From Anolis carolinensis (Eukaryota), in contig NC_085842.1 in NCBI RefSeq assembly GCF_035594765.1, positions 235,053,747 through 235,117,746 of the forward strand: a stretch of DNA of 64,000 bases. Reading direction: 5' to 3'. The notes beneath the pieces were generated by a model. That model saw only the letters and a program-made list of their open reading frames with translations. It made no database searches and had not been told where the DNA came from. The translations under genes and the position numbers were made by a program. Shown piece after piece: positions 1 through 63,589 of the stretch. The first letter of the stretch is position 1, and every line of letters begins with the position of its first letter.

Positions 1-1076
1 AGGTGTCTCAGCAGTTGCCAGGCTTTTCGGCTACTCTTGGACATGTCAAGGTTCTCAAGCAGCTCTATCCAACGGTCTTTCTTAGCATTAGCTAAGGCTG
101 TAGATAGTTTTTGACCTGCTGCTATAGTCCCGTCACTGTATGGATTCTCTTGAAATAGTCTGAGATATTCCTGTAGCTGATTTAGCGATTCTTCGTTTAG
201 GCCTGGTAGGTAGCTTGTGCGACAGCCTCTAGGGATTGAGAGCCTTGAGGATCTTTTCACAGCTTCTACAAACAGGTCATAATTTTCTATAGAAGGTTCT
301 ATATCAGAAATAGCAGCTTCCATGGTCTCTGTAAACTTTGTCCAGTTAGCTTTATTGAAGTTATATCTTCTGCGGAATGGGACACTTTTTGGTCTTACAG
401 CTGCATATGCTACGCAGCATATTGGTCTGTGTTGTGTGTTAGGTATCGGGTTTAATACCCTTTTGACGCATTGGTGGCTTATGCTTTCCTTTACAAAAAT
501 CGGATCAGGGTTATAACCACGCTTCCATCAGCCGCTATTGAAAGATGGTGGTAATTTACTGTCATGGAGGAGGCTCATTCTACTATTGTCGGCCCACGTT
601 AGAACTGCTTCGCCATTTCTATCATCTTCGTCATAGCCCCAGACACAGCTATGGCTGTTGAAATCTCCCACAACAAAATGGGCTTCATGACTGTGGCAAT
701 TGGTTGGGGGCGTAAAATAGAAATCAGCCCCAGGTGGTTTATAGAGTGATGATACCTTGCAACTATCAAGTTCCACAGATAAGATTTCAATGTTGTTCGC
801 TTCTGTGAGGGAAGTTGCAGAGATTGCTACACCAGATCGTACAAAAATGGCACTGCCATATTGCCTGTGAGGTCGTTCCACTGCCAGTTGCATTCCAAGA
901 ATTTTTGGTCTTCTCATTGTGATGTCTCTGTGTGTTTCCTGTATACATAGGATGTCACACGAAATGTCCTCAGACATTTTGGCTAATAGTTCTTCCTTAG
1001 CAAGTGAAAAACCTTCTATATTAATAGACATAATCGTTAGCAATGGTCTCGATAAAGACCTTTGGTATTCATCCAT
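1..1076 (-). pseudogene. Vingi ORF (APE endonuclease plus linker) broken by one in-frame TGA at 528-530
   Basis: ORF 528..1076 ends FNSG*. The same frame continues open to the window edge (WKRGYNPD...QHRP...RKAWQLLRH). The stop fits CGA>TGA CpG decay (SGRW). Confidence 0.85.
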
Positions 1077-1097: not shown

Positions 1098-1187
1098 GGA
1101 AAGATTGGCTGCTTACAAGAAACGTTGCCCAGGGGACGCCCGACTGAATCTTACTCAATCTTCGGGGAGGCTCTTTCCGTGTCCCCC
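1098..1187 (-). ncRNA. HDV-like self-cleaving ribozyme fold forming the Vingi 5' end
   Basis: P1 GGGGGAC/GUCCCCU with G1.U wobble; P2 GGAAAGA/UCUUUCC; P3 GCC/GGC; L3 starts UCCCCG; P1.1 CC/GG; J1.1/4 GGGCAAC; P4 GUUU/AAGC; J4/2 GCCAA. Confidence 0.8.
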
Positions 1188-3743: not shown

Positions 3744-4145
3744 ATTACAGAAAAAAAAATCATTATATTAAAAATGTGAAAGATAGACACTGGATATGAA
3801 CACAGACAGAGAAAGAGAGAGAGGCAAGATATATTTTTCCAGGAAAAGAAATTTACATAGAGCTGAACATTGTCTGGTTATTATTTTTTTAATCACACTC
3901 TTTATTCTCTGCTAGATGTATTACAGTGGATACTTACGACCTCATCACATTGAGAGAGGAAAACATGGGTGACTGTCCTTTTAGTATAGAGAGTCACCCC
4001 TCTTATATCGTCAGCAGCCCCATTTTGAGTTCTGCCTCCCCATCACACTCACATGTGGAAACTTAAGTGCTGGCAATAAAATCTCTTGTAGTTTGATTCC
4101 ATATGAGTGCACGTCCAGTTATATTACGGTATATGGTGGTGTAGT

Positions 4146-4190
<45 letters not shown>

Positions 4191-4298: not shown

Positions 4299-4587
4299 CA
4301 GGACCATAGCCAGAAAAAAATTCGGGGGGGGGGGGGGGTGTTGAAACTTTTTTTTTTTTTTTTTTTAGCAAATCATGAAGAATAATTCAATAATTCAAAA
4401 TAATTTAGAAATCAGGCTCCATCGATAAACTTCAGTGGACACTCAAGATAGATAAACTTCAGTGGACACTCATGGGGATTTGTTTAGCCAGTTAAAATTC
4501 ATGAGTAAAACAGTTTTTTTAGCCTGAAAATTTCAGGGGGGGGGGGAGTGAACCCCAACCCCCCCCCCCCCCTTTACTACAGCCCTG
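4299..4587. mobile_element. Non-autonomous DNA transposon (hAT-like) with G/C-run subtermini
   Basis: Imperfect TIR CAGGACCATAG/CTACAGCCCTG; perfect 8-bp TSD ACTACACA (4291-4298, 4588-4595). Confidence 0.75.
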
Positions 4588-9528: not shown

Positions 9529-11406
9529 AAATCTATATAGGCTGATGAAAAAAATTGTTTGCCACCATATTGTCCTGGTCTGCCTTGACCCTCCAGTGAT
9601 CTTTTGGAATATGGGATGGCTGTGTAAACAATTGTCGCTGGTTCTATCTTGGATCCAAAGTTACAGTTTATATGGACCCAAAGTTACAATATACAATACA
9701 TAGGCTCAAAGTCCCAGTTTGCTCTGGATTCTTGGGGGGAAATCAGAGCAACCAGCAACTATTAAAATGTGGTTCAAGACCCCATTAAGCGCCTTTGGCC
9801 TATGTTAACCTGAATCAGCTCCATGCGTCATGCAGTTGTCATAGAGCTGATTCACTCCCTTTCAGGATAAATGGTCAATGTAGATGTGGCAAATGCAAAG
9901 TCCCATTGATAGATATTTAACATCTCATGGTTTTTATTTTATGAAGTGTATGGGTCTCACATTGCCATCCAGATTTCTTCTGTTGAAGTCACAGGGATCG
10001 CCCATTTCAAAATGGAAAATGATGTCTTACAACTAATAATTTCCCAATACAAAACTGACATACTTTTCCCACCTGCCCACCCCTGTTGTTGTGGCACTAA
10101 TATCTAATAGGAATGCAAAGCTTTATACCTAAATATTTGTGGTCAGAAGCTGTTCCAGCTACAATAAGCAGCAAAAACACAACTGATGGGTTTGACGTTT
10201 GCGGTTCAAGATTACAGCAGGCTGATGAGGACATCAAAAACATAAAGGTTTTGATCAATGAAAACTACTCACTGTTAACACAAAAGTTCTTAGCTACTCT
10301 GAATGAAAAGGAAGTGCACTGGGAGAGAAAGTAATGAACTCATAAAAAGCATGAGAGGACTTTTTTGATGACCAACCCATGAAATAATGAGACCACACAC
10401 AGTATCTGGGGTGGAACAAGGGTCACTTTATTTAACTACCACCTATTTATTTTGTATTCCTTATAGATAACATAGTTAGTCATGGGATTGACTTTGTGGA
10501 GTGTATGTATTTATTGTAACCCTGCAATCTATCCTGAGATCTTCTGGTCGAAACCATCAAGAAGATACTGGCTGGGAACTGGGTGAAAGAAATACAAACC
10601 CAGATCTGAATTACTGACTTAACTCATTTATTTATTTATTTATTTTGGGGGGGGGGGGGGATGTGCGACACATCATTACAGGAAAGAGTAACAGCAAAAT
10701 AGTGAAGAAAGTAGACTTTTCCAGTAGTCATTAATTGTAGCTCACAGTTTTTATATACATGCTGTTGTATTGACTGGGTGGTTGTATACAGCCATTATAT
10801 AAAGAATGTAGGCAATCTATTTGACAATAAGGAGCAGAGAGATGCCATTGAGGACGTGTTTTGGGTAGTCACATGTACTTGAACTTCAAAGCCATTTTTG
10901 GCATTTTAATACTGGATTCAGCAGAGTCATTCTGTGAAATTAATTGACTATGCATCCAGGATGGAGGGAAAAGGAAAGGAATAGGAAAGGAAAAGAAAAT
11001 ACGCCTTAGTAAGTTTCCAAAATTACCAATAAAATGAAAGATGTGGTGGTGATTGCTAGCCTATATTCCCCACCCACGCCGTTGTTAAAAGACATATTAA
11101 TGAAAGCTAGATAGATAATGAAGTTTGAAATGATTAGGCCCAAGTCAAGACATTGCACAGCCTAAGATGGAACAGAAAATGGCAACCCCTCCTTCTCCCT
11201 TCTATGTGTAATAGCTAAGGCCTGCAAAGCTGGCACTCAAGGATAACAATTTTGTTTTATATCAAGTTATTGGTATGAATTACACCAAGTTATTTAAATA
11301 TCCCAGAATTTGCATAGCCACAACCTTGCAATATCCAGCAGGCTGCTTCCTCTGCCTCACCGCCTTCTTTGTTCCACAAAACCTTATTCTAAGTAATGGA
11401 CTAGCA

Positions 11407-12176
11407 CAGGGGTCCTCAAGCTTTTTAAGCAGAGGGCCAGTCCACAATCCTTCAGACTGTTGAGGAGCCAAATTACCATTTGAAAAAAAAAAACAAATCA
11501 ATTCCTATGTGCATTGCACATGTCTTATTTGTAGTGCAAAAAACCCCCAACAAAAACAATAAAAGAACAATACAATATATAAAAATAAAAACAATTTTAA
11601 CCAACATAAACCTATCAGGATTTTAATGGGAAGTGTGGGCCTGCTTTTGGCTAATGAGATAATCAAGTTAATTAGGATTGTTGTTGTTGTTGTTGTGTGC
11701 CTTCAAGTCATTTCAGAATGTGGGCAAGCCCAAGTCTCAAACTGAGGGAGGGGGCCAGGTAAATGGCCTTGGAGGGCCGCATCCGGCCCACGGGCCTTAG
11801 TTTAGGGACCCTAACCCTAACCCTAACCTAAACCCTAATCCTAACCTTCAACAAAATCTCTCACCCAAACCCTAACTGTAACCCTAGCATAACCCTGATC
11901 CTAACCCTAATCTGAACCCTAACCTAATCGTAAACCCAACCCTAATCCTAACTCTAACCCTAACTTTAACACTAACCTTAACCCTAACCCTATCCCTAAC
12001 ACTAACCGAACCCTAACTGAAACCTTAACCTTAACTCTAACTCTCACTCTAGCCTAACCCTAACAATAACCCTAACAGTAACTCTAACCCTAACCCTAGC
12101 CTAACCCTAGCAGGGGCCAGGTAAATGACCTTGGAGGGCCGCATCCAGCACATGGGCCTTAGTTTGGGGACCCCTG
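11407..12176. mobile_element. hAT MITE with an internal telomeric array and duplicated right subterminus
   Basis: TIR CAGGGGTCC...GGACCCCTG; TSD GACTAGCA/GACTAGCG. Confidence 0.85.
11808..12110 (-). repeat. Degenerate interstitial telomeric sequence (TTAGGG)n, ~300 bp
   Basis: CCCTAA and variants in tandem on the + strand. Confidence 0.9.
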
Positions 12177-12249
12177 GACTAGCGCTACACACCAGAGGGA
12201 ATTTGCATAATCTCCTTTCTAATCATATCACCTTGGGAAATACAGCTAA

Positions 12250-12400
12250 GGCCCCTTCCACACAGCTGAATAAAATCCCACATTTTCTGCTTTGAACGGC
12301 AATATATGGCAGTGTGGACTCAGATAACCCAGTTCAAAGCATATATTGTGGGATTTTCTGCCTTTATATATTCTGGGTTATAGGGCTGTGTGGAAGGGCC
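12250..12400. mobile_element. Palindromic MITE (PIF/Harbinger-like, TIR GGCCC(C)TTCCACACAGC); related copies ~13328-13470, 14390-14830, 14991-15075, 15657-16817, 29675-29823, 63505-63585
   Basis: Long inverted ends, TAA/TGA flanks, shared internal CCAGTTCAAAGCAGATA motif. Confidence 0.7.
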
Positions 12401-15400
12401 TTGAGAGGAGAAAGCATGGATCACCATGAGAAAATCACCCATTTGGAATTTTGCCTCCCCATCAGACTCACACGATTTAAAATCTGGCAATACATTCATC
12501 TTACATTCATCACAAGGTCAGTATTTTTTAACCAGGAGATCCCTTGCCCTGCCCAAAGCCCCTTACATTAAAGGAGACTGACACCAGTTTAAAACCGGTT
12601 CTTTCCATGGAATCCTATGGTTCTGTCCAAGTCCCATAGGATACAAGAGACAGTGATGCAGGATAAAACCATTTCTTTTCATGGGATCCTATTATTCTTG
12701 AACCGCATAAGGTTCAAGAGACTGCTGAAAGGGGGCAATGAAACAGGATGGGAAACTTTTGATGGTTACCATCCTACCAGTTTTTTCATTGTAACGATGG
12801 GAGTAAAGTGCGATAAGAGATAGGAGCTCTGAACAGGATTGTTGGCCTGTATTCAGAATGCCCTCCTTTCAGGACATTTCTGCTTCTTTGCAACCCTGGA
12901 ACATGTGATGAGCTCTGTGCCTCACCATGCTAGAGAAGAGGCTGAAGTGTCCTAAGAGAAGGAAATTTCTCAATGTGATGAGGTCAGATAGCCAGAGCTT
13001 TCTCCTTTCAGGACACTTCTGCCTCTTTTCAACCAAGGAGGGCTATGCATGATGGTCAGAAGTAGTTTAACTCATGGGATGAACATAGTGCCTTTCCATG
13101 CTTGAAAAGAGGCTGAAGTGTCCTAAGGCTAGGAAATTTCTCAATGTGATAAAGTGGTAACAGCCGGAGACTATTCACGAAACATGAGCTCAACAATCCT
13201 TAGCATTTGTTCATAGTTTTCAAAGTAATCAAAATTAGCCAGTTCCAAGTTGATGGGTTTGTTTTTTAACTACTAAAACTTTTTAAAAGTAATAAGTTGG
13301 GTTCTAAACCTGACTTAAGTAGTTGCTGGGCCCTTCCACACAGCCATATAACCCAGAATATCAAGGTGGAAAATCACACAATATCTACTTTGAACTGGGT
13401 GATCTGAGTCCAATCTGCCATATATCCCAGTTCAAAGCAAATAATGTGGGATTTTATTCAGTTTGTTATAGTTGCATTTTAAAAGGAGCTCTTTCTTTTC
13501 TTATCATTCACAGCAAAGTAAAATTTTAGTGATTTTAAAAAAACACATCAGATTGCCACAAAGCTGACAGCATGTTCTACAAAATACAGTAATAGTCATA
13601 TCACAAAAGGAGTAAAATTATTGAACAACTTAATTATGGCTTTATTATTGCAAAAAAAAAAAATAATTACACATACCCCATTATTGAAAAAAAATATCTG
13701 TGATTCTGGGTAATACAACCCAAGGTCAAACATTAGAAGGAGTAGAACAAGAAGTCAAAATTTCCACAATTCCAGTATATCTTCTCAATCCCATGACTTT
13801 AATATGATATTTTCGTATGCCAAAATTTCTGCTAAAGGTCATAGAAGGCTATGGGACTGTATTTAATATCTACATCTTGTCTGCTGAGAAAACACATTCT
13901 CTCCAAGCTTATTAAAACCAGGAATCTGCCATGTTTGTCCTGAGCTGTGGTCTTTCTTGGGAAATTTCACCTACCTTGCCCATTAATATATCTGACCTAA
14001 ACTGAATAAATGTATTGAAAATAACATATTTTCAGAGTCATCTAGAGATTCGAATACATTTATATTTGATATCGGCTGGTTCTTGCTCCACAAGCTGTTT
14101 CACTTTGATGGCACACTTGTCATTTCCCCGGGGGCAAGTGACTAATGTGAAATATTTCCTACGGAAACTGAACATGCCCCATTTTGTCAGGTTATACTAC
14201 AATTTAAATTATATTTTATATTTGTAGTATTTCTGTCGCCCTTAAGTATTTACTAGCACTTCCTTTATTATTTGCTGGCCTTCACATTGCTCTTTAGCAA
14301 CACACCTCTTCCATGCCTTCCAAAATATGATGGATGAAACAAGGGAAATATGGATTCTGCACTATCCCATCTTCCCCCGCTTTCTAATGCTGGGTCTACA
14401 CTGCCCTACATCCCAGGATCCGATCTCAGATTATCTGGCAGTGTAGACTCATATAATCCAGTCCAAAGCAGATAATCTAAGATCAGATCTTGAGATATAG
14501 GACAGTGTAGATCCAGTCTAGTACTCATTGTTAAAAACTCCTCAGGGCCATTTAATCCAGATTATCAAAGCAGATAATCCACATTATATGCTTTGAACTG
14601 GATTATATGAGGCCCCTTCCACACAGCTGAATAAAATCCCACATCACCTGCTTGAAGTTGAATATATGGTAGTGTGGACTCAGATAACGCAGTTCAAAGC
14701 AGATATTATGGGATTTTCTGCCTTGATATTCTGAGTTATATGGCTGTGTGGAAGGGCCATGAGTCTACAATGCTAGATAATCCAGTTCAAAGCAGATACT
14801 CTGAATTTTATATGGCAGTGAAGAAGGCTCCTTATTTTCCAACACCCTGTAATTCATTAACATTGCCATTCTGCATACACTTGACTACTACTATGCCATA
14901 CAATGGCTCTTACTTTTGAGTAGAGCTTGTAAAATTTCAGAGGAAAAAATATTACTGCAGCCACTTTTACTCAAGCAAGATGAGGGTCTGAGGCCCCTTC
15001 TACACTGCCCTATATTCCAGGGTCTGATCCTAGATTATTCGAATATCCCAGATTATCTGGCAGTGGAGACTCAGGCTCCTTCTATACTATCTGTATATCA
15101 TGTCTTCTATGCCTCTTGCTGTTACTAGAATAGCTTCCACACAGCCAGCTCTGTCAGTTTGGGCAGTAAATATTTCACATCTATTGAGTGACTGCTGTGA
15201 CAGGCAAAACTAATACAGACAGGAAGTTACAACCAAAGGGTGAGGTGATGGAGAGCTACCTTTCCTGCAAAAGGAAGCTGTAGGAATATTGATAACAACA
15301 ATACGCAGGTTGCTATTTTCTCTGTGATAAAATGCCAGGACATTTCTTCTCTATTCAGAACACAGAGGCTCCTAGGAAGTTGATGAAAGCTTCACAAGAG

Positions 15401-15713
15401 ATGAATTTGCAAAATTAAATGACAACATTTTAAACAATAATGTGCTATTCACATGACAGGAAGGTTAATAAATAGGTTCATGTTTATGTGATCATCTATC
15501 ACAGCACAAAGTGTCAAGCACACTGTTAACACTACTCCCTTCATTTAATCACTTACCAATTTCAGAATTTTATTATAGTCCAGAAATAGAATCCAAAAAT
15601 TAGGTTATTTGATCTGGCGCCTTTTGTAACAAACTGCCCTTCCACACAGTCATATAACCCAGAATATCAAGGCAGATAATCCCCAATATCTGCTTTGAAC
15701 TGGATTATCTGAA

Positions 15714-16757
15714 GGCACTTCCAGACACCACTGAATTGCGGATTTTAGTCAGGGCAAAAAAATCCGGGCCTTCAGAAGAGGTCCACATACAGAACTATTG
15801 ATCCCAGGATTTCTGTCTCCATCGTCCAGACTTGATGCTTTGTTGCGGGATTTAGAGGCTCCCAAGATGACCACCACAGGATGTCCAACAGAAACTTTGG
15901 CATTTGTTTAACTCAAGATGCAGATATGAGGATATGCGAATCACCTTGCTGCCTGACCTTCTGTCCAGACAGATTTGATTGTGTACTTGTGGCATCGAAC
16001 AACAGATTGCTGTTCCTGGGTTATACATAGCTGTTCCTGATTGCTTTTATTGTGAAAAGATGTACAACATTGACTAGGGGAGCACAACTTTGTCCTGGCC
16101 AGAGAAACTGTGCCCTTCATACGTTTAATGAGGTTTCTGCTACACAAACAAACCTAATGGGGTAGGACCAATTCTGTCCAAGTCAGCACTACACAGTCAA
16201 ACAGGAACACACACTTTCAAGCCAGGAACAGAACGTTGTCATTATTGACACTTTTTAGAGGCTGCCTAGCCATCTGTCCATATGGGTTTTGTCATGTACT
16301 TATGGCATGGAACAGCAGGGTGATTTTCCTGGATTTAAAGTACCTGTTCCTGTTTCATTGTGTACTATTGTGGAAGTACTTGTTCCACCCCAGAAACTTC
16401 ATTTTTCTGCCACAAACTTCATTAAACAAGTGAAGGACAAAGTTCCTCTTCCCAGGACAAAGTTTTCGCCTTCTATTCAAGTGTCACCTTCTTTTTAGGA
16501 ACCAACCAATCAGGAACGAACATCTAAAACCTGGGAACAAATCTAGATAAAAAATCCCATGATTTCCAATTGCGGGAACATACAGACATGCGGAGATCCG
16601 CATTTTCTGCTCACAACCGGAATATTCCCGCACCTGAACATCTCACATTTTTTGCTGTTTGTAGCGCTTCCTCCTGCGTTTTGAGGGAACAGCATCTGGC
16701 CACCCTCCTGATTACTGCGGAAACTCCTGGGATAAAGTTACTGTCTGAGCGGGCCCT
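15714..16757. mobile_element. ~1-kb non-autonomous TIR element nested inside the 15657-16817 MITE; related ends at ~1628 and ~21715
   Basis: Ends GGCACTTCCAGACA / TGTCTGAGCGGGCC split the host MITE at GGATTATCTGA|GTCCACACTGCC. Confidence 0.55.
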
Positions 16758-16830
16758 GAGTCCACACTGCCATATAATCAGGTTCAATGTGGATTTTATA
16801 CAGCTGTGTGGAAAGGTAACATTTAACCTA

Positions 16831-16861
<31 letters not shown>

Positions 16862-16988
16862 CAAAATCCAAAACTAGTAATGATGGCTAAAAGTTTTCTC
16901 TGCTGTGAAAAGAACTGGCCATTTTAGCAAAATCAGAAGGTCTCTGCTAACTCTCCATCCAGTCCCATACTTAGTCTGCCTACTATAA

Positions 16989-17313
16989 AAGGTAAAGGTT
17001 TCCCCTGACATTAAGTCCAGTCATGTCTGACTCTGGGGGTTGGTGCTCATCTCCATTTCTAAGCCGAAGAGCCAGCGTTGTCCGTAGACACCTCCAAGGT
17101 CATGTGACCGGCATGATTGCATGGAGCGCCGTTACCTTCCCACCGGAGCGGTACCTATTGATCTACTCACATTGGCATGTTTTCGAACTGCTAGCTTGGC
17201 AGAAGCTGGAGCAACAGCGGGTGCTCACTCCGCTCCCGGGATTTGAACCTGGGACCTTTCGGTCTGCAAGTTCAGCAGCTCAATGCTTTAACACACTTTG
17301 CCACCGGGGCTCC
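16989..17313 (-). mobile_element. Sauria SINE, full length
   Basis: tRNA-like head, Sauria body, (ACCTTT)n tail, TSD-like CTGCCTACT. Confidence 0.92.
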
Positions 17314-19975
17314 TCCTGCCTACTGTATAAATCTAGAAATTTTCATCAGAAAATCAACCCTCCAAAACTGGGTCAACTTATCCACAGGTCAATGTACAAA
17401 CTGCACCTTAACTCTTATGTTTAAAGGAACTATCTCCTTCTCTGAATAGAGTGGTGAAAGGCAAGAGCACAGTCCATCTCAGGAGAACCTAAAAGAAGCA
17501 CCGATCCCCCTTTACTCTCCACCGTGACACCACTTCTGGCCTTTTTGAATGTCTGGATGGGAAAATGGCATTGGCAGCTCTTTGACACATTCCCCCAAAG
17601 GAATGCTGCGAGAGTAGAAATTTGTAGTCTCCCCTATTTCTTAGAAGTCATCACAAGGACAGATTAATGTTATTTCTAACAAACTGTCACTCCGATAATT
17701 ATAGGGTTTTTAAAAAATCAGATACTAGACCATTATTTACTGTGTTTGCCGTATAGTGTGCGTATCTTTAAAACGTTCAAAGCATTTGCAGGTCTCTAAA
17801 ATGACATAAGACATGGAATCAGGTGCCATCAGGTTCCCAAGATAATAACATTTTTAAAAGACAGAGCTCCACTAGATAACACATTGTTTGATACTACGAA
17901 TAGTCCAGTGGATATCCCAGACACCCGCATTCTGCAGCCGCAGATAAATGGCATAGAATAGTGTCAAATATCTGATAACAGAGTTCTTAAAACAGGATTG
18001 ATGCTACGTCTCCCTTTCTCCATCTTATCACGGTGGACATGCAACCGGACAGTCTCTCTGCACTGCTCACTTCTCAGGCATACAGCATAAATCCATACAG
18101 TACAAATCCACTTTTATATAAAACCTCCCTGAATAAGGCATGGCGCTTGTAATGGAAAATTAATTGGATTTCTTTATGACCGGCAACAATCCCATGGAAA
18201 ATTATGTAAGTATAGCATGATTCAATCTTGGTGTGCGCTTGAATCATGCTTTTAAAAAAATGTAGAAAAGAATGTGCTATCTCAAAGAGAGAGAGAGCGA
18301 GCCAGAAATGAAAATAGCAATTTCTAACCACGTGGCCCAACATCATTTGTAACGGCACAGACAATGTGCATGTGTCATTGTCCCAACCCAGTGTAACATA
18401 AATGCACAAATTATAAGCCATTCACTGTGAATTCCAAAGCCCTTTCAAGGCCTCTGGGCTTGACATTGTGAGGACATAATGCTCTCTTTTCATGTCTCCC
18501 CATGTTCTGAGCCAAAGTGTATGCTTCGTGCATTAAAGAAAAGGGGGAAAAGATTGCTTCATCTCATTATCAGATCTACCTTTCCAAATAATGACAAGCT
18601 TGAGTATTCTTGTGTACAAGTTTGTGGCTTTGTTAACACACATGGTTTCGCAATAAAGAGGAAGACAAATACATCAAAGACATTCTGTGAGTGCCTCATA
18701 GGGGACCAGATTATTTAGGGAGGGGGGAGAGAAAAGAGGAGAGAGAGAGGGAGAAGGCCTCTTGTTTTTTTAATAGTAGCATAGAAAAAAAATCTCAACC
18801 ACTAAGGTTTTCCTTCACCCCAAATGACCAGCTGCATCTGCCAATAGTTCCTCAGCAGTTACTTAATAATACGTTTCATCATCTTCCCTGCCCCATTTCA
18901 TGCCAAATTGGTCAAGGCATTGAACATGCAATCTATGTATAGTTCTCTGGAAAAACAGTGCATCTGTCATGAGATGAAATATGAATATATGGTTTGAATG
19001 AACTGTATGGTAGGAATAAATGAATGAGAGCTAATAATTTGGAGACACAATTCTAAAATTAAGGCCTGCAATGACTAACTGCCTGCTTGCTGAACTGTAA
19101 TTAAAAGTTGCTAGTGAGAACTGAAATGGTTGACCTGCCTAGTTAAGTGTGATAACTGTGACAGTGATAAGAGAAATGTTTACATCTGTTTACATCTGTC
19201 AACATTGCTGACTTGATGAACTTTTGAGGCAGAGACAATGACTCTTTTAAATTAAGGATGTTAAGAAGGAGGTCAACACAAGGGCAACACTAATCAAGAG
19301 AAGTCAACAACATCTGGCCAGAATACTCCAGGATGGAAGACATCTATCATTAATTTACAACTTTGGGACAACATCTGCAAAATATTGCTATATAAGTGAC
19401 CTTATGACAATTCAGAAACAGAGACACTGTTCACCTGCTATGCTCTGCTCCATGGGAAGGGGAAAGAAAGTGTACTTTTGGAGAGTGTCAGATCTGCTAT
19501 GGGAAAGCAGGATTTTGTACACTTGCTCCTTTTCTCGAGGGAAGAGGAAGGACTGCATTTTGGAATCATGATACGTATTGCAGTGTGATAGTTCTTCTGT
19601 AGGGAAAGCAGGATTCTGATCCTTGGCATTGTTCTTAGGGAAAAAAGGATGCATTTTAGAGTTTTGAAGTTTTGGCGTTTTGGCATTTTGGAACTATGTG
19701 TTGACAGGCTGCAGAGGAAGCAGGGCCTGGCCTAAGCAAGTGCTTCTCCAAGGAGGGAGGAAAGTATATGGTAATATTTCGATGCATGAGCATGAATGCA
19801 TGTAGATGTGTGTGAATGCTGAGTGAAAATATAACCCCTCCTTTTGTCTGTTTGCTAGCCAATGTAATGTAGTTGCATAGACTCTGTATGTCTGTATGTC
19901 TAAGTGTTGTTCTGTAAAAGTTCTGCTGAACCCTCTCACACTGAAATTGCAATATAAAGAATCTATGCTTTAAAA

Positions 19976-20297
19976 GCCCCTGGTGGCACAGTGTGTTAAA
20001 GCGCTGAGCTGCTGAACTTGCGGATCAAAAGGTCCCAGGTTCAAATCCCGGGAGTGGAATGAGCGCCCACTGTTAGCCCCAGCTCCTGCCAACCTAGCAG
20101 TTCAAAAACATGTAAATGTGAGTAGATCAATAGGTACCGCTCTGGCAGGAAGGTAATGGCCCTACATGTAGTCATGCCGGCCACATGACCTTGGAGATGT
20201 CTACGGACAATGCCGGCTTAGAAAGGGAGATGAGCACCAACCCCCAGAGTCGGTCATGACTGGACTTAACGTCAGGGGAAAACCTTTACTTTTACCT
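19976..20297 (+). mobile_element. Sauria SINE
   Basis: A/B boxes TGGCACAGTGTG / GTTCAAATCC, ACCTTT tail, TSD TATGCTTTAAAA. Confidence 0.92.
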
Positions 20298-21444
20298 ATG
20301 CTTTAAAAGATATTGGAAAGTTATTCATAGCGCATTCATACTGTAGAATTAATGCAGTTTGACCCCACATTAACTGCCATGGCTCAATAGTATGGAATCC
20401 TAGGAGTTTGGCCTAAAATACTAAAGATCTTTAGTCCTTTTGGCAGAAACGATTAAAGAACTTGTTAAGATTATAACTCCCAGGATTCCATAACATTGAG
20501 CTTTTAAATGAATTTAAGTAGTATCAAACCCCATTCATACTACAGTGTGTAAACAAAAATCCTAAATAGCTTCTGTCATAGAAAAGAAATGCAGGATTCT
20601 GGAGTCCAGGATATTTACTGGACCAATATATCTACCATATTAATTAGTTCTACTTGGCTGTGATCCTTCACACAATGAAAGTTGGATGAGAAGGTAGTGG
20701 AGGCATGCTTAACAGTCCCAATTACTCTGACATGTCTTTGTCACAGATTTCAATGCATTTACTAAAGGAAGGAAGTCTGAATTGAGGCGTTTAGTCACTG
20801 TGTGCAGACTGACCACAGGACCGAAGATTTTTATGACCCAGGATTCTGAATCATACAGAGAGATTTGGTCACAAACAGGGCTCCCCATCTCACCAGGGTG
20901 AACCAAGTTGTCACGTTAGGTTTCTCTCCATTTCTCATTTTTCCCAAGCTTAAGTATGGATCTATTTCAGAGGAAGGAACTGGAAAAATTATATCAGAAT
21001 ATTCCTCTCCTAAGAAAACCCTACCAAATTCATGTCAATTGGTGGCTTAAAGACTCATTCATGTGCGTCTACCAACAATATTGGTAGGATATTGATCTTT
21101 TGAGCTCCTGCTGACACTTTGATTCTCCCTCCCTCCCTCCCTCTTCAGAGAAATGACAAAAAAGATCTTCTCTACATGAGAAAGTGCAACCACTGGAGGG
21201 CCAAACCCTTCAAAAAACATTACTGTTTGCTTAGCTACATTTGGAGCCAAGATAATGATTTGATTTTTTAATAGCTCTGATTGACTGAGAGCAATGAAAA
21301 AGATGCATCTACAAATAATTAGAACTGTAAAGGAGATTGCAAAAGGAACAAATGAAATGAGGGAATTGAGGAGTAGGATGGGAGTAATTATTGTAAAGGA
21401 CTGAAATTTCACTTGTCTAGGGCCTAAACATCCTAAAGGTAACA

Positions 21445-21660: not shown

Positions 21661-24562
21661 ATCCATTTAAATGAGAAAAAATGAACATTAAAATACTGTA
21701 AAAGAGCCTCTAAGGGCGCTTCAAGACAGCATCAAAATTCAGATGAAATAAATGGGTTTAAAAATTGGGGAACTGGATAGCAAGTCCAGACACAGACCTG
21801 TCAGTCCTGGGAAATAGTCCCCCTCCATCCTGACACCTTCCTTTGTAGAGGATTTTACAAATTGGAAAGATGGACAGGGGGCATCTGGCGGAAGGTGTGT
21901 TTTTAAAAATTCTCTCTGAGATGCTCTGGATCGTATATGCGATTATGTGAATATCTCAATGTACACACAAGCAGACTTCTTATTCTCACTCCTCACCCAA
22001 CTGTAGATTCAAGCTCTGTTTAATATCATAAAGATCTGAACAAAAGAATGGTTGCAGAGAGTTCAAATCATAATTGCTTTACATTTGTACTTTCTTTTAG
22101 CCACCTGTGTGTCCGTGATTCCATTTTTTTGACAGCCCTGATCAGCTGTTTCGGGCTTTTAAAATGTGCACATGCACTGGAGCAGTCCACACCAAGATAT
22201 ATGAAGGAAGTCACATGCTTTCCATGACTGCAGGGTTTTGAAAGTCAGCAAGACGAAGGGGAAAGTATCCGAGTGGCGAGGAAGGTGAGGGGGGAAGGGT
22301 TTGGGGTGAGGGAATCTGGAGACTTTTTGGTGACTTCCTGTTTTGAATTGCTTTGGTTATTTTTAGTGGTTTTATGATCAGTTAGAATAAAATAGAATAA
22401 CTTTATTATCATTGTAAATTGTACAACAAAATTAAATGCTTTCCCCAGCACACATCACAAAAACAACACACCCATCCTGCTACACTCCAACCACCACTGC
22501 ACATCCCCCAATGCCATATCAATACAAAACTATTGAGTTCAATATAGTTACAGCTCTAGAATAATTTTGGTGTAATTTTTCAACTAAAAAAATGTTCAAG
22601 AAATGAGGAAAATGCAAGAATGCCAAAACAACAATGGAGATCTCATGCAGTCCATGATACAGACACTTCCCAGACCACAAATAATGTGATGGGACACATC
22701 TTAGCTTGCCTGTGTTAGACTGACAATGTTCTCCTATAATTTGTTCGGTCAAGAGATAAACTCTCACCATCATGGTGTTTCCATGACATAGTTATGTTAG
22801 TAAGCCGAAAGTTTCTATGATCACAAAATAAGAACCTTTAAAAAAACCCAAAAAAACAATTGGGGTGATTACATCATATGCCACTTTTCCAAGCCAGGGT
22901 CCCTTATTATCTGTGAATATAACAGGGATCCTCAGGGAAGCTGCAGAGAAAACTTTTTCCCAGTGACTGGGTTTTGTTTTTGTTTTTGCAGTGATATGTT
23001 CTTGAAGAAACAATGGAGACTCAAATGACCTGCTGTCACTGGAGATGAAAACAGCCAAATCTTTTTTATTCGCAGGGATCAATATAGCAACTTGCATTTT
23101 GGAACTTTATTTTGGGGGCATGGCTATGGGGACTATCAGAATAAACACCTGCAGTTCAACATTAATAAGTTTCCTAACTCCTTGACTTCAAATTTCTACA
23201 TTTTATCATACATGTATTGAATTGGCCAAATACACTAGGGTTGAATTTGAGTGTATGCTAGCTTTCTTCTGTTGGCGTGGGCAAAAGAGTGGCCCCCACA
23301 CTTCATTATGCAGGAATGAGATCTCTGCAACAGAGGACTTCAGACCTACTTACAATTCACCAGTATGTCCATTGGACTGGCTTTAGGAGACCTCAGAAGT
23401 TAAGAATACCGCAGAGGAGGTATCAGAATAAAACATCAAACACATTGGTTCACAATAAGATGAGAATCAGCTCTTGTTCCAAAAAAGACAAACTTCCAAT
23501 TTACAGCAGACGCCTTGAGGGAGAACTCTGTCTGTCTACCCCTTCACCTTGGGATGGATAATATCTGTATCGGAGCCCCATTTCCCTTTCTAATTCTATT
23601 CCCACTTCTGTCTCTCTGACTTTGCAAACTGCTACCTGTGCTGCCTTGGGCCAAGGCATTGTTTACCTTTCCAATCCCTTTCCCCAGTCTGATTACACTT
23701 CTTCCATGTCTCCCTGACTCTTTGTGCCCTCCTATTCCCTTATTCAATGTCCTTTTGCCTTTTTGTATCACTCACACACATTGCTCTGTCTTGTCTGGTC
23801 CTTCTCCCACCTCCTGCCTCTTCTATAGCATTAACCGGACCGTTGCCAGGTTTGTGCTAATGCTGCTCATGTTTTTATTATATCTTTTCCCCATGCTACC
23901 AGCCCACTCTGCTCAGTTTCCTATAGGGAATTTGGACTCTTAATCTCTGCACATTGTCTTCTTACTCCTTTCCCCCACTTCTATGGCTTAAGTCCTGATC
24001 TGGTGCACTGTGACTTTGAGCTAAAGATCTCCACGCATATTTGAGAGTAAAGGTGGAATGCCACATACATATAGATGAGGGGATGTGGTAGCATTTGGGA
24101 GGTATATAGAATATAATCTTCTCACACATACATTTATGCACCAGTAGAGCATTTAGAACATTTTTGAAACAAAAGAATTCTCTTAGTGCACGATTCCAAC
24201 TGCATTTGGGGGTTCAGTATCAAATAAACAGAGAACATAGGAGTGATGGAATGGCATATTCTCCAAAAGAATAAATAAAGAGAGCAATGCATCCCTGCTC
24301 TCATAGGCAAATCTTAGGACTTTATCACACCATCCTGCAATCTCATCGCAATCACGTTGTTTAAGCAAATGGAAACATACTGTTGTTGGAACAATCTCTT
24401 TCACACCTTGGCACAATTACACAATCCTGGCACTTCATTGATTGAATTCCTGTTATTAGTCTTTCACACAGCTTCACTTCTTTACCCATATTTCCCCTAC
24501 TCCAGGCATTTGCTCTGTTGTTTTCCCCTATTTTTCTATTTTCCTCTTGCTTTGTTGCAACT

Positions 24563-24740
24563 GGGCACCCCTGATAGTGCAGCAGGTTAAGGCGGTTCGA
24601 ATCCAGGGAGCAGGGTGAGCTCCTGATGTTAGCCACAGCTTCTGCTAACTTAGCAGTTCGAAAACATGCAAATGTGAGTAGATCAATAGGTACCACTCTG
24701 GCAGGAAGGTAACGGTGCCTGAATGACCTCCATGTGGACT
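24563..24740 (+). mobile_element. Internally deleted Sauria SINE
   Basis: TAGCAGTTCGAAAACATGCAAATGTGAGTAGATCAATAGGTACC core. Confidence 0.85.
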
Positions 24741-49039: not shown

Positions 49040-49188
49040 TATCTCTCATATCCCCGCAAGTTAGAGCTGATAGATGGGAGCTCACCCCGTCTCGCGGATT
49101 TGAACCGGCAACCTTCAGGTCAACAACCCAACCTTCAGTTCGACAATTCAGCAGGCACAAGAGTTTAACCCATTGTGACACTGCACCT
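49040..49188 (-). mobile_element. 5' half of the Vingi-related tRNA-SINE (same family as 62855-63143)
   Basis: Shared AACCGGCAACCTTCAGGTCA...AACCCAAC...GGCACAAG; ends within the ribozyme-derived segment GCGGGGATATGAGAGA. Confidence 0.75.
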
Positions 49189-51858: not shown

Positions 51859-52190
51859 GGAGCCTCCGGTGGCTCAGTGTGTCAAAGCGCTGAGCTGCTG
51901 AACTTGCAGACCGAAAGGTTCCAGGTTCTAACCCGGGGAGCGGAGTGAGCGCCCGCTGTTAGCTCCAGCTTCTGCCAACCTAGCAGTTCGAAAACATGCA
52001 AATGTGAGTAGATCAATAGGTACTGCTCCGGCAGAAAGGTAACGGCGCTTCATGCAGTCATGCCGGCCACATGACCTTGGAGGTGTCTATGGTCAACTCC
52101 GGCAATTCAGCTTAGAAATGGAGATGAGCACCAACCCCCAGAGTTGGACACGACTGGACTTAACGTCAGGGGAAACCTTTACCTTTACCT
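51859..52190 (+). mobile_element. Sauria SINE, full length
   Basis: TSD AACATAAGGCCT (51847-51858, 52191-52202); ACCTTT tail. Confidence 0.93.
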
Positions 52191-62087: not shown

Positions 62088-62854
62088 AGACCACAGGGGT
62101 GGTGTAGTGTGTCATATACAGGAAAAGCCATAAGTAGAACTTAGAATACCGGAAAACCATGAACTTCAGGGGCTCTCAAATACCTTAGACCTAGCCATAA
62201 AGTAGATGGCCTATTTTGTGGTATGCAGAAAACAATTGATAAATAAATTACAGCCAATTTTCTTAGTGGTACAGTCTCCATTACCTCTGACAGCAGCAAA
62301 CTGCCTCGCTAAAATGATAAGAGGTGAATAATAGTGTATCGAGTAGCAGGCTGAGGAAATTCTTTCCGAGTCCTCTTTGCAACAGCAATGACACAAAGAT
62401 CATTCACAAAAGGGCATGGGATGAGCTGTGGAAGCTGAAGGAGGCAGACAGAAAGGTGGCTGTGAGGGAACTCACACCATTACTGGACTGGCTATGGGTG
62501 GTATTCATTTCCTCCTGTCTGCTTTGACTCAGACTTGTGGAATCTTCTTACAACTAATAGTAAGCATTAGACTTCCTCAGACAGATGTGGTGTGTAGCAT
62601 CAAATACTACTGGGCTCAGCGTCTTTCTCATTACTTCTTGATAGAAGCAGTCAAAATATCTCAATATCACCTCATCCCTTTTTCTAGCAAGCTATCTACA
62701 ATTTCTTCCCTCCCTCTATCGGAAAGATATAATATACAATTTCTACTGTGTTTACTATTAACAACCCAAAATGACTGGGATCCTATCTACCGGTCATATC
62801 AAAACCTTAATTTTGGCCCTAAAACCTGCCCTTGACATATACACAAGGTTGACT

Positions 62855-63143
62855 TTTTTTTCTGTCTGGAGCGACTTGAAAAACTGCAAGTTGCTTCTAG
62901 CATGAGAGAATTGGCCATCTGCAAGGATGTTGCCCAGGGGACGCCCAGACATTTTTGATGTTTTACTATCCTTGTGAGAGTCTTCTCTCATTTCCCTGCA
63001 TGGAGCTGGAGCTGACAGAGGGAGATCATCTGCACTCTCCCCAGGTTGGATTCAAACCGGCAACCTTCAGGTCAGCAACCCAACTTTCAAGTTAACAGTC
63101 CTGCTGGCACAAGGCTTTAATCCATTGCATCAACAGGGGCTCC
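62855..63143 (-). mobile_element. tRNA-headed SINE containing a Vingi 5'-derived (HDV-like) middle segment
   Basis: Head GGAGCCCCTGTTG..., B-box-like GGTTTGAATCC; the 18-mer GTTGCCCAGGGGACGCCC (62929-62946) is identical to Vingi 1124-1141. Confidence 0.75.
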
Positions 63144-63589
63144 AATGTGGGTTTACTCTTATAATTGTGTTAATTGTGTATAAGTGTTAATTGAAAAATA
63201 TGTGGGGAGGGGGATACTTCTACATGTCTAACAATAATTCCTTGTTTTTTGTGTCTCCACACTAACTTGTAGTAGGAAGGTACTACTTTTTAATAGTAAC
63301 CTTTGGTTTTACATTTTAGTTCCTTTTATGTATGTCTGGCTATCTCCTATTTTAAATGGCTGGCAATTTCAAGCTGTACTCCCTCAATGAAAAGCATGAA
63401 TGTTGATGTCTTTCAGGATTTAAAGTCCCATTCCACATTAATTTCTGACAAGGGAAAAGTACCATAAAGTTCATAGTTAACTAGCATATCATGTAGTAAT
63501 CTAAGGCCCAATCTACACTGCTACATAATCCAGTTTCCGAATGCAGATAATCTTCTTTAAACTGGATTATATGGCAATGTAGATATAGA

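What the first reader, a model, noticed from the sequence alone, without database searches (positions are those of the whole stretch)
62904..62998. A SINE carries the same HDV-like fold internally, with compensatory stems but a broken cleavage site
Seen: behind the tRNA head, the minus strand has P2 GAGAGAA/UUCUCUC (Vingi: GGAAAGA/UCUUUCC) and P4 CAUC/GAUG (Vingi: GUUU/AAGC). The GGC-GUCCCCU-GGGCAAC core and GCCAA J4/2 are identical to Vingi, so sequence changed while pairing was kept. Position 1 of P1 is C instead of G in both this copy (CAGGGAA) and the second copy at ~49050 (CGGGGAU), giving a C/U mismatch at the scissile site, and L3 lacks the G25 equivalent. Inference: the SINE parasitises Vingi and keeps the pseudoknot as a non-cleaving scaffold (e.g. 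for RT/ribosome recruitment or 5'-end completion), since cleavage would remove its Pol III promoter. The compensatory pairs may simply be inherited from a different Vingi subfamily. LINE-5'-derived SINE middles are known in general; the active-LINE/disarmed-SINE pairing is the idea to test.
Basis: partly seen in the sequence, partly recalled or inferred. Interest (0 to 1): 0.7.

Follow-up and report, generated by a model that had tools for sequence, protein, structure and literature searches.

The report
Disarmed delta-ribozyme fold inside lizard SINE
The middle of this lizard SINE copy is a captured front end of a Vingi jumping gene that folds like the hepatitis delta self-cutting RNA. The whole SINE family lacks the G at the cutting site, so it is most likely a switched-off relic that lets the SINE keep its promoter-bearing head.

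Summary
Window 62998-62904 (minus strand) has P2, P4, the GGC-GUCCCCU-GGGCAAC core and the GCCAA J4/2 as described. It shares an exact 18-base core with the Vingi LINE 5' end at 1187-1098.

This copy is decayed: P1 pairs at 4 of 7 positions and P3 at 2 of 3. About 11,000-19,000 contigs from each of four public runs were laid on it. Their majority letters restore P1 (6 of 7), P3, P1.1 and P4.

Position 1 stays C (T in 9-14%, no G listed at the 5% threshold). All six Vingi LINE 5' modules I could compare have G there and G at the G25-like L3 position; the SINE has neither.

The Vingi fold is real. It covaries across relatives, and two relatives reach Rfam's curated cut-offs (CPEB3 ribozyme; HDV-F-prausnitzii).

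Homology to Vingi starts at nucleotide 2. Upstream, the SINE matches Sauria-type SINEs, so the join lies at the ribozyme's cutting site.

Best reading: a ribozyme captured and disarmed at the birth of the SINE. A selected scaffold role is untested. The P2 "compensation" was probably inherited from another Vingi lineage.

The SINE-Vingi link is published (Kojima 2011, 2018); I found no paper on the ribozyme fold. This scan noted the same module before on other windows of this genome. Cleavage is untested.

The parts
62853..63145 (-). Whole SINE copy: tRNA-like head, Sauria-SINE-like linker, Vingi 5' module, short Vingi 5'-UTR remnant, 3' hairpin tail, poly(A).
   Evidence: Summed contig depth rises from about 7 in the unique flanks to 0.9-1.35 million inside (run X1). 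Contigs with unrelated flanks break at 62854. Sequence.
63040..63145 (-). tRNA-like head with a B-box-like GGTTTGAATCC at 63058-63048. The family majority reads GGTTCGAATCC.
   Evidence: B-box pattern: 5 matches in the window against 0.42 expected. Position 63054 reads C in 64% of depth. ARAGORN and Rfam call no tRNA here. The head aligns with the heads of Sauria-type SINEs.
62999..63039 (-). Linker shared with Sauria-type SINEs. Homology to them ends at about ...CAGCT(CCA)TGC, immediately before the Vingi-derived GGGGAC.
   Evidence: Alignment A4 with four Sauria-type copies from the same window.
62904..62998 (-). HDV-like module (the finding), derived from nucleotides ~2-90 of a Vingi LINE.
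62992..62998 (-). P1 5' strand. It reads CAGGGAA in this copy and CGGGGAC in the family majority. Position 1 (62998) is C.
   Evidence: at 62998, C with 9-14% T and no G row listed; at 62997, G in 61-78%; at 62992, C in 98%..
62983..62989 (-). P2 5' strand GAGAGAA. It pairs with 62910-62904.
   Evidence: 7 of 7 paired.
62980..62982 (-). P3 5' strand. It reads GAC in this copy and GCC in the family majority.
   Evidence: Position 62981 reads C in 94% of depth..
62946..62979 (-). L3. It starts UCUCAC (family UCCCAC), with the P1.1 partners at 62978-77. An inserted hairpin follows at 62971-67 / 62951-47 (family GGAUG/CAUCC). This subfamily carries a 9-base duplication.
   Evidence: Loose ends at 62945-49 show that most family members lack the duplication.
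62936..62945 (-). P3 3' strand GGC plus P1 3' strand GUCCCCU. Identical to the Vingi.
62930..62935 (-). P1.1 GG plus GCAA. Identical to the Vingi and to the genomic HDV consensus in Rfam's RF00094 alignment.
62916..62929 (-). P4 hairpin. It reads CAUC-CUUGCA-GAUG in this copy and CGUC/GACG in the family majority.
   Evidence: 62928 reads G in 55-68% and 62917 reads C in 45-59%..
62904..62915 (-). J4/2 GCCAA (the C75-like C is at 62914), followed by the P2 3' strand UUCUCUC.
62853..62903 (-). About 12 bases that continue the Vingi 5' UTR (family ACACCAGAAGC against Vingi ACACCCAAAAGC), then an inverted-repeat tail hairpin (62897-62868), then poly(A) at 62860-62853.
   Evidence: (loose-end consensus).
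49042..49175 (-). Second, fragmentary copy of the same SINE type. It has the head, the linker and the 5' strands of P1 and P2 (CGGGGAT at 49056-49050). Homology ends inside P2.
1098..1187 (-). Reference module: the HDV-like fold at nucleotide 1 of a Vingi LINE. P1 GGGGGAC/GUCCCCU has a G-U pair at position 1, and L3 holds an 8-bp hairpin.
534..1076 (-). Start of the Vingi ORF (AP endonuclease domain). The ATG lies 22 bases after the fold, and an in-frame stop follows codon 181.

Best explanation
The stretch is the body of one decayed copy of a very abundant lizard SINE. By its description it is the SINE2-1_ACar type. The SINE is a chimera of three parts: the head and first linker of a Sauria-like tRNA-derived SINE; the first ~100 nucleotides of a Vingi LINE; and a short Vingi-type 3' hairpin tail with poly(A).

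Shown by comparison: the Vingi part is an HDV-like double-pseudoknot ribozyme fold that heads Vingi LINEs.

Inferred: in the LINE this fold cuts in front of G1 and so defines the 5' end of the LINE RNA. In the SINE the Vingi homology begins at nucleotide 2, and position 1 is a C that belongs to the upstream SINE partner. The capture therefore happened at the ribozyme-made 5' end. It could have been a full-length insertion of a processed, internally deleted Vingi RNA into a SINE copy, or a template switch at that RNA end. Either way it lost G1.

Without the G1 pair, and without the G25-like G in L3, the fold is predicted to be catalytically dead or very slow. That is the condition for a Pol III transcript to keep head, body and tail in one piece and be copied whole by the Vingi enzyme.

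The intact helices in the family majority are most simply inherited from the parent Vingi. Any present role of the fold is unproven.
For: Homology: an exact 18-base core is shared only by these two places in the window, and the similarity runs on for about 12 bases past P2.

Family state (four runs, 11,049-19,120 contigs each at >=80% likeness):
- P1 positions 2-7, P3, P1.1 and P4 are restored.
- Position 1 is C. T at 9-14% looks like CpG decay. No G row is listed.

LINE state: G at position 1 in 6 of 6 Vingi modules (G-U in 2, G-C in 4), and G at L3 position 6 in 6 of 6. The SINE has C at both.

The fold is real in the LINEs:
- P1, P3 and P1.1 are 96.7% paired, and 7 of 12 pairs change on both sides. 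Slid controls give 30-48% paired.
- A descriptor finds it just upstream of the endonuclease ORF in L001, L007 and the window. It gave 9 matches from 5 distinct places, against 0-2 matches per shuffle.
- L006:45-119 scores 67.3 bits on RF00622 (cut-off 35). L001:146-212 scores 44.3 bits on RF02682 (cut-off 44).

Junction: homology to Sauria-type SINEs ends at ...TGC, directly before GGGGAC. Kojima's table lists the alligator SINE2-1_AMi matching Vingi-2_Gav from position 2.

No efficient cleavage before copying: depth is 0.93-1.15 million on both sides of 62998, and no pile of contig ends at 62998 appears among the best-supported loose ends.

HDV literature: changing G1 or U37 lowers activity, and G25A lowers it ~3000-fold (PMC1874588).
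Against: - Cleavage was never measured, either for the LINE fold or for the SINE fold.
- The L3 hairpin changes the loop geometry. The G that follows the hairpin (62946; 1141 in the Vingi) could play the G25 role, so loss of G25 is not certain.
- A 6-bp P1 starting at G2-C36 would mimic the G-C first pair seen in four LINE relatives, apart from one extra U before P1.1. Residual activity in that register cannot be excluded.
- Assigning C1 to the upstream partner rests on three aligned bases.
- The parent Vingi subfamily and the Vingi 3' end were not available.
- Depth from contigs is a poor measure, as the tool itself warns, and 1,388 loose-end places were not shown.
- This copy belongs to a subfamily in which one P4 pair (62928/62917) and one L3-hairpin pair (62967/62951) are changed on both sides and still pair. 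That hints at selection on structure in SINE master genes.
Confidence: 0.68

Rival explanations
1. Selected non-cleaving scaffold. The SINE keeps the pseudoknot because the fold itself is needed. It might protect the RNA, or the Vingi protein might recognise it, or it might help finish the 5' end of the new copy. Cleavage is kept off by selection.
For: - All helices are intact in the family majority.
- In the subfamily of this copy, the P4 pair 62928/62917 is A-U instead of G-C. These letters account for 32-55% of depth, against ~10% for ordinary CpG decay at 62943/62942.
- In this copy all four changes in the L3 hairpin keep pairing.
- Internally deleted Vingi elements that keep only the 5' and 3' ends are common (Kojima 2018).
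- Engineered Vingi-1 donors keep both UTRs (PMC13708176).
Against: - Linkage of the paired changes could not be tested.
- Both P4 changes are CpG transitions, which are individually likely.
- The same subfamily breaks P1 pair 2 (G to A at 62997, 22-39% of depth).
- Helices in a consensus can be plain inheritance from a recent parent.
- The P2 differences from the in-window Vingi resemble other Vingi lineages.
Confidence: 0.2
2. The module still self-cleaves, slowly or in a shifted register (in front of G2, with a G-C first pair). This would produce head-less RNAs equivalent to bipartite non-autonomous Vingi elements. Full-length copies would come from the uncleaved fraction.
For: - Four of six Vingi relatives have G-C, not G-U, at the first P1 pair.
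- The C75-like C, P1.1, P3 and the GCAA are all present in the family majority.
Against: - The shifted register leaves an extra U between P1 and P1.1.
- The G25-like G is missing.
- Depth does not fall upstream of P1, and no pile of ends at P1 appears among the best-supported places.
- A SINE that cut off its own promoter would leave few transcribable daughters, yet the family's summed contig depth is about 10^5 times that of the unique flanks. The tool warns that this ratio is not a copy number.
Confidence: 0.1
3. Chance resemblance: the SINE body is unrelated to Vingi and to HDV-like folds.
For: - Rfam finds nothing in this copy.
- blastn links the two places only through the 18-base core.
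Against: - An 18 of 18 match is found at exactly these two places, with 0.06 expected even allowing 3 mismatches.
- Order, spacing and pairing are the same for five helices. Family-majority letters move the copy toward the Vingi at 62992, 62981 and 62977.
- The published SINE2-1_ACar/Vingi-2_ACar relation.
Confidence: 0.02

Closest known systems
HDV-like self-cleaving ribozymes at the 5' ends of non-LTR retrotransposons (R2, RTE, L1Tc/Ingi, LOA; Ruminski 2011, Eickbush 2010, Sanchez-Luque 2011, as listed in PMC5786205)
   Same: A nested double pseudoknot sits at nucleotide 1 of the element. It has a GGGCAAC-type core and a C in J4/2, and the ORF starts shortly after it. Vingi is the sister clade of Ingi, whose L1Tc ribozyme is proven.
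   Different: Vingi is not among the six ribozyme-bearing clades listed in 2018. The lizard version has a hairpin inserted in L3. The SINE version lacks G1 and the G25-like G, and it lies inside a Pol III unit instead of at an RNA 5' end.
SINE2-1_ACar / SINE2-1B_ACar, and SINE2-1_AMi (Kojima 2011, 2018)
   Same: A tRNA-derived head with a middle taken from a Vingi 5' end (and, for the ACar families, a tail from the Vingi 3' end). For SINE2-1_AMi the match starts at Vingi position 2.
   Different: Those papers describe sequence similarity only. They describe neither a ribozyme fold in Vingi nor its disarmed state in the SINE. The name of the family here could not be checked against Repbase.
Genomic HDV ribozyme (Rfam RF00094) and mammalian CPEB3 ribozyme (RF00622)
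   Same: The GGC-P1-GGGCAAC core is nearly letter for letter that of the genomic HDV ribozyme. A Vingi relative (L006) is a full CPEB3-type match at 67.3 bits.
   Different: The SINE copy scores on no Rfam model. The Vingi copy scores 22.4 bits against a cut-off of 50, because of the L3 insertion.
Bov-tA, WALLSI and other SINEs born from bipartite (5'+3') non-autonomous LINEs
   Same: The same route of origin: a SINE head fused to an internally deleted LINE.
   Different: RTE-derived SINE bodies usually lack the extreme 5' end. Kojima suggested this is because of the ribozyme. Here the extreme 5' end is kept from nucleotide 2, with the cleavage-site base replaced.

Membership tests
HDV-like (delta) self-cleaving ribozyme | Nested double pseudoknot P1, P1.1, P2, P3, P4 in the canonical order | tested here: met
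   Family majority: P1 6/7, P2 7/7, P3 3/3, P1.1 2/2, P4 4/4. This copy: P1 4/7, P3 2/3.
HDV-like (delta) self-cleaving ribozyme | G at position 1, paired (G-U or G-C) at the cleavage site | tested here: not met
   C at 62998 in this copy, in the fragment at 49056, and in the family (C with 9-14% T; no G row listed at the 5% threshold). All six LINE modules have G.
HDV-like (delta) self-cleaving ribozyme | Catalytic C in J4/2 (C75 equivalent) | tested here: met
   GCCAA at 62915-62911, identical to the Vingi; no variant is listed there. The assignment is by alignment only.
HDV-like (delta) self-cleaving ribozyme | L3 with U20 and a G25-type G | tested here: inconclusive
   L3 starts UCCCAC in the family, against UCCCCG, UCUACG, UCCUCG, UCCGCG and UUCACG in the LINE modules. 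The aligned G is therefore absent. A G does follow the inserted hairpin in both the SINE and the Vingi and might substitute.
HDV-like (delta) self-cleaving ribozyme | Score on a curated covariance model | tested here: not met
   No HDV-type match in 62880-63010 at E<=10. Vingi 5' end: RF00094 at 22.4 bits against a cut-off of 50. Relatives L006 and L001 pass.
HDV-like (delta) self-cleaving ribozyme | Site-specific self-cleavage | not testable with these tools
   No RNA run holds the stretch, and all runs are kept as contigs.
SINE with Vingi-derived body and tail (SINE2-1_ACar type) | tRNA-derived head with Pol III boxes | tested here: inconclusive
   B-box-like site at 63058-63048, perfect in the family majority. 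The head aligns with Sauria-type SINE heads. ARAGORN and Rfam call no tRNA, and the A-box pattern is not informative.
SINE with Vingi-derived body and tail (SINE2-1_ACar type) | Middle similar to a Vingi 5' end | tested here: met
SINE with Vingi-derived body and tail (SINE2-1_ACar type) | 3' tail similar to a Vingi 3' end | not testable with these tools
   The window has no Vingi 3' end. Only the published statement is available. The tail is an inverted-repeat hairpin plus poly(A), and two complete-looking Vingi relatives also end in an A run.
SINE with Vingi-derived body and tail (SINE2-1_ACar type) | Dispersed high-copy family | tested here: met
   11,049-19,120 contigs per run align at >=80% likeness. 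Summed depth is about 10^5 times that of the unique flanks, though the tool warns that this is not a copy number.

The most novel reading that the evidence does not exclude
The disarmed delta fold is kept by selection because the Vingi machinery needs the 5' pseudoknot in cis, for RNA protection, protein binding or completion of the 5' junction. The SINE would then be a natural minimal donor: a non-cleaving 5' pseudoknot, a ~30-base 3' hairpin and poly(A). Its join at nucleotide 2 would record in the genome where the Vingi ribozyme cuts in vivo.
Probability: 0.2. Interest if true: 0.75.

Novelty: new variant of a known kind. Interest (0 to 1): 0.5.

Why it matters
- **SINE origins.** This is a concrete case of a rule so far only argued in theory: a LINE 5' ribozyme must be switched off before its sequence can serve as a SINE body. 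Here the switch-off coincides with the capture junction.
- **Vingi biology.** It supports a delta-type ribozyme at nucleotide 1 of Vingi LINEs, a clade not listed among ribozyme-bearing LINEs.
[quoted passage not shown] If that UTR self-cleaves, it would remove anything placed upstream, including a cap. The SINE's version is a natural variant predicted not to cleave.
- **CPEB3 ribozyme.** The CPEB3-type match at a Vingi 5' end bears on the open question of where the mammalian CPEB3 ribozyme came from.

Tried and rejected
- **Peptide look-up.** I searched the large protein collection with the 46-residue ORF that runs through the module, hoping to fetch SINE copies through called ORFs. No candidate was found.
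- **Metagenome scan.** The 18-base core gave 24 hits. All are chance matches in G+C-rich bacterial coding DNA.
- **Viral contigs.** No hits.
- **Contig look-ups.** Two returned no DNA.
- **Other fetched loci.** L032-L034 and L002/L003 gave only 5'-cut or decayed modules of other Vingi lineages. None comes from a lizard lineage with the L3 hairpin, so the parent of the SINE module was not found.
- **Vingi 3' end.** tblastn with Vingi ORFs found no 3' end in the window, so the tail comparison was impossible.
- **MAFFT alignment (A2).** Aligning all modules misplaced L3 and P3 of the lizard sequences and used wrong coordinates for L006. I replaced it with a helix-by-helix parse and with A3 for the short-L3 relatives. 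I built no covariance model because the 3' halves do not align.
- **Descriptor scan.** The first version was far too permissive (1,345 hits). The tightened version still misses L004/L005 (J4/2 reads GCAGAA) and this decayed SINE copy.
- **RNA evidence.** No listed run is on record as RNA. The two runs guessed to be RNA behave like DNA, with even depth over the unique flanks.
- **Large HMMER protein search.** Not used, because the protein is not in doubt.
- **Chance resemblance.** Rejected.

Full report
**What is at the coordinates**

Read on the minus strand, 63145-62853 is one SINE copy. It has five parts:
- a tRNA-like head with a B-box-like site at 63058-63048;
- a linker;
- the 95-base module of the finding (62998-62904);
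- about 12 more bases that still resemble the Vingi 5' UTR;
- an inverted-repeat hairpin tail and an A run ending at 62853.

- P2 GAGAGAA/UUCUCUC;
- P4 CAUC/GAUG;
- the core GGC-GUCCCCU-GGGCAAC;
- J4/2 GCCAA;
- C at position 1.

The 17-base core GGCGTCCCCTGGGCAAC (18 bases with the G in front of it) occurs exactly twice in the window. One is here. The other is at 1124-1140(-), inside the 5' end of a Vingi LINE. With up to 3 mismatches allowed, 0.06 matches are expected by chance.

It is only a fragment, because its homology stops inside the 5' strand of P2.

**The reference fold in the Vingi LINE**

At 1187-1098(-) the sequence fits the HDV-type double pseudoknot without a mismatch:
- P1 GGGGGAC/GUCCCCU, with G-U at position 1;
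- P2 GGAAAGA/UCUUUCC;
- P3 GCC/GGC;
- P1.1 CC/GG;
- a short P4;
- J4/2 GCCAA;
- an 8-bp hairpin inserted in L3 (z = -4.65 when folded alone).

The endonuclease ORF starts 22 bases later and is broken by one stop after codon 181. Rfam's HDV model matches below threshold: 22.4 bits, E = 0.17, with a 22-base insertion in L3.

To test whether the fold is more than a drawing, I fetched relatives of the endonuclease piece together with their DNA. The same architecture sits just upstream of the homologous ORF in L001, L007, L004, L005 and L006. P1, P2 and P3 covary among them.
- On the aligned 5' halves, 96.7% of cells pair and 7 of 12 pairs change on both sides. Slid controls give 30-48% paired.
- A descriptor gave 9 matches from five distinct places in 143 kb: three Vingi 5' ends and two spurious places. 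Shuffled sequence gave 0-2 matches.
- L006:45-119 reaches Rfam's CPEB3 ribozyme model at 67.3 bits (cut-off 35). L001:146-212 reaches HDV-F-prausnitzii at 44.3 bits (cut-off 44).

The Vingi 5' module is therefore a real member of the delta-ribozyme fold class, with cleavage untested. Kojima's 2018 list of ribozyme-bearing LINE clades does not include Vingi. Searches for Vingi or Anolis together with ribozyme terms found no description of it.

**This copy against its family**

This copy is decayed. P1 pairs at 4 of 7 positions and P3 at 2 of 3, and Rfam sees nothing in it.

I laid the contigs of four public runs of the same organism on 62780-63220 at 80% likeness or more. Between 11,049 and 19,120 contigs per run aligned. 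Summed depth inside the SINE is about 10^5 times that of the unique flanks, which the tool warns is not a copy number.

Majority letters, in RNA sense:

| Place | This copy | Family | Effect |
|---|---|---|---|
| 62997 | A | G, 61-78% | P1 pair 2 restored |
| 62992 | A | C, 98% | P1 pair 7 restored |
| 62981 | A | C, 94% | P3 becomes GCC |
| 62977 | U | C, 95% | P1.1 becomes CC |
| 62967, 62951, 62950, 62947 | A, U, G, U | G, C, A, C | L3 hairpin GGAUG/CAUCC |
| 62928 | A | G, 55-68% | P4 becomes CGUC/GACG |
| 62917 | U | C, 45-59% | P4 becomes CGUC/GACG |

The family module thus has P1 6/7, P2 7/7, P3 3/3, P1.1 2/2 and P4 4/4.

Position 1 (62998) stays C. The only other letter listed is T, at 9-14%, which is what CpG decay gives. 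No G appears at the 5% reporting threshold. Eleven less-supported rows were not shown.

All six LINE modules have G at position 1 and G at the sixth L3 position. The SINE has C at both. For the HDV ribozyme, changes to G1 or U37 lower activity, and G25A lowers it about 3000-fold (PMC1874588).

**Where the Vingi part begins**

The window also holds four Sauria-type SINE copies, near 17.2, 20.0, 24.6 and 51.9 kb. Their head and first linker align with those of the Vingi-bearing SINE up to ...CAGCT..TGC. After that the Sauria type continues with its own body, and this SINE continues with GGGGAC.

The Vingi starts GGGGGAC. The SINE therefore carries Vingi from nucleotide 2, and its C at position 1 looks like the last base of the upstream partner. 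That assignment rests on three aligned bases.

Kojima's table independently lists the alligator SINE2-1_AMi as matching Vingi-2_Gav from position 2.

The simplest reading has three steps:
1. An internally deleted Vingi RNA, whose 5' end had been made by its own ribozyme, was inserted into or joined to a Sauria-like SINE.
2. It lost its first base in the process.
3. Only such a disarmed join could found a SINE, because a working ribozyme would separate the Pol III promoter from the tail.

The last step is Kojima's published argument.

**Is cleavage really off?**

Only indirect evidence is available. Contig depth is 0.93 million in the bin holding P1 and 1.15 million in the next bin upstream (run X1). 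There is no drop toward the head. The best-supported loose-end places include the 3' boundary at 62854 but not 62998. Most copied RNAs therefore still carried their head.

No run on record as RNA holds the stretch, and all runs are kept as contigs. RNA ends could not be examined.

**Are the stems compensatory because of selection in the SINE?**

Against the in-window Vingi, four of the seven P2 pairs differ on both sides and still pair. P4 and the L3 hairpin also differ in sequence but not in pairing.

However, the SINE's P2 resembles the P2 of distant Vingi lineages (L004/L005) more than that of the Vingi in this window. The published parent is Vingi-2_ACar, which I could not obtain. These differences are most likely inherited.

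Within the SINE family there is one hint of structure-preserving change.
- Sense A at 62928 and sense U at 62917, which pair with each other, account for 32-55% of depth. The unrelated CpG at 62943/62942 shows about 10%.
- The partner changes expected from symmetrical CpG decay are not listed.
- This looks like a subfamily with an A-U pair in place of G-C.
- In this copy all four L3-hairpin changes also keep pairing.

Against this, the same subfamily seems to carry A at 62997, which breaks a P1 pair. Linkage could not be tested because the tool returns no contig sequences.

**Verdict**

- Homology to the Vingi 5' ribozyme fold is supported, and so is a family-wide missing cleavage-site G.
- The scaffold function is untested.
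- The compensatory stems are probably inherited.

The SINE-Vingi relation and the logic of disarmament are already published (PMC5786205). The ribozyme fold in Vingi, its L3 hairpin, its disarmed state in the SINE, and the junction at the cleavage site are not in any paper I could find.

This scan has already noted the same module on several other windows of this genome. Those notes call the organism the green anole, which I did not verify. My tests agree with them.

I built no consensus of the LINE. The only majority-letter sequence I made was the 109-base stretch (62895-63003) around the SINE module, for folding.

Noticed in passing
L006:45-119 (ENA metagenome assembly ERZ27286572, contig of 2,095 bases): A Vingi-type LINE 5' end matches Rfam's mammalian CPEB3 ribozyme model in full, at 67.3 bits (cut-off 35, E = 5.5e-16). 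It lies directly upstream of the endonuclease ORF, which starts at 169. Decayed versions of the same type head the Vingi copies in L002, L003 and L034. A CPEB3-type ribozyme as a LINE 5' end bears on the origin of the CPEB3 intron ribozyme. The host organism of the contig is unknown.
   Followed up: partly
L001:146-212 and L007:324-394 (JGI metagenomes); L004:9900-9969 and L005:9901-9970: Minimal delta-type folds with a 7-base L3 (no hairpin) head other Vingi lineages. L001 reaches the cut-off of RF02682. Four of these have G-C, not G-U, as the first P1 pair.
   Followed up: yes
window 1098-1187 (-), ORF 534-1076 (-): Complete HDV-like fold at nucleotide 1 of a Vingi LINE, with an 8-bp hairpin in L3. 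The ORF starts 22 bases after the fold and has an in-frame stop after codon 181. The LINE runs off the start of the window. The upstream 1190-1320 reads like the C-terminal part of another LINE's reverse transcriptase. That resemblance is recalled from memory and was not tested.
   Followed up: partly
window ~17000-17300 (-), ~19990-20300 (+), ~24560-24720 (+, partial), ~51870-52190 (+): Four copies of a different, Sauria-type SINE; three of them end in ACCTTT repeats. The head and first linker are homologous to those of the Vingi-bearing SINE, which shows that the latter is a chimera.
   Followed up: partly
window 62795-62854: The DNA directly downstream of the SINE's poly(A) is itself moderately repeated. 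Its summed contig depth is about 90-390 times that of the unique flank in run X1, so it is another, lower-copy repeat.
   Followed up: no
window 62946-62960: This copy and a minority of the family carry a 9-base duplication (AAAAAYRUC) in the 3' side of the L3 hairpin. Most family members go straight from ...AAAACAUCC to GGGC, as shown by the loose ends at 62945-62949.
   Followed up: partly
window 62868-62897 (-): The SINE tail is an inverted repeat. In the family it is about 11 bp, GAAGCGACUUG / CAAGUCGCUUC. In this copy it is weakened at a decayed CpG. It is likely the hairpin recognised by the partner LINE's enzyme.
   Followed up: no
window ~4470-4575 and ~4107-4187 (-): A long G run and a (TG)n microsatellite. 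They produced spurious hits in my first, over-permissive fold descriptor.
   Followed up: no
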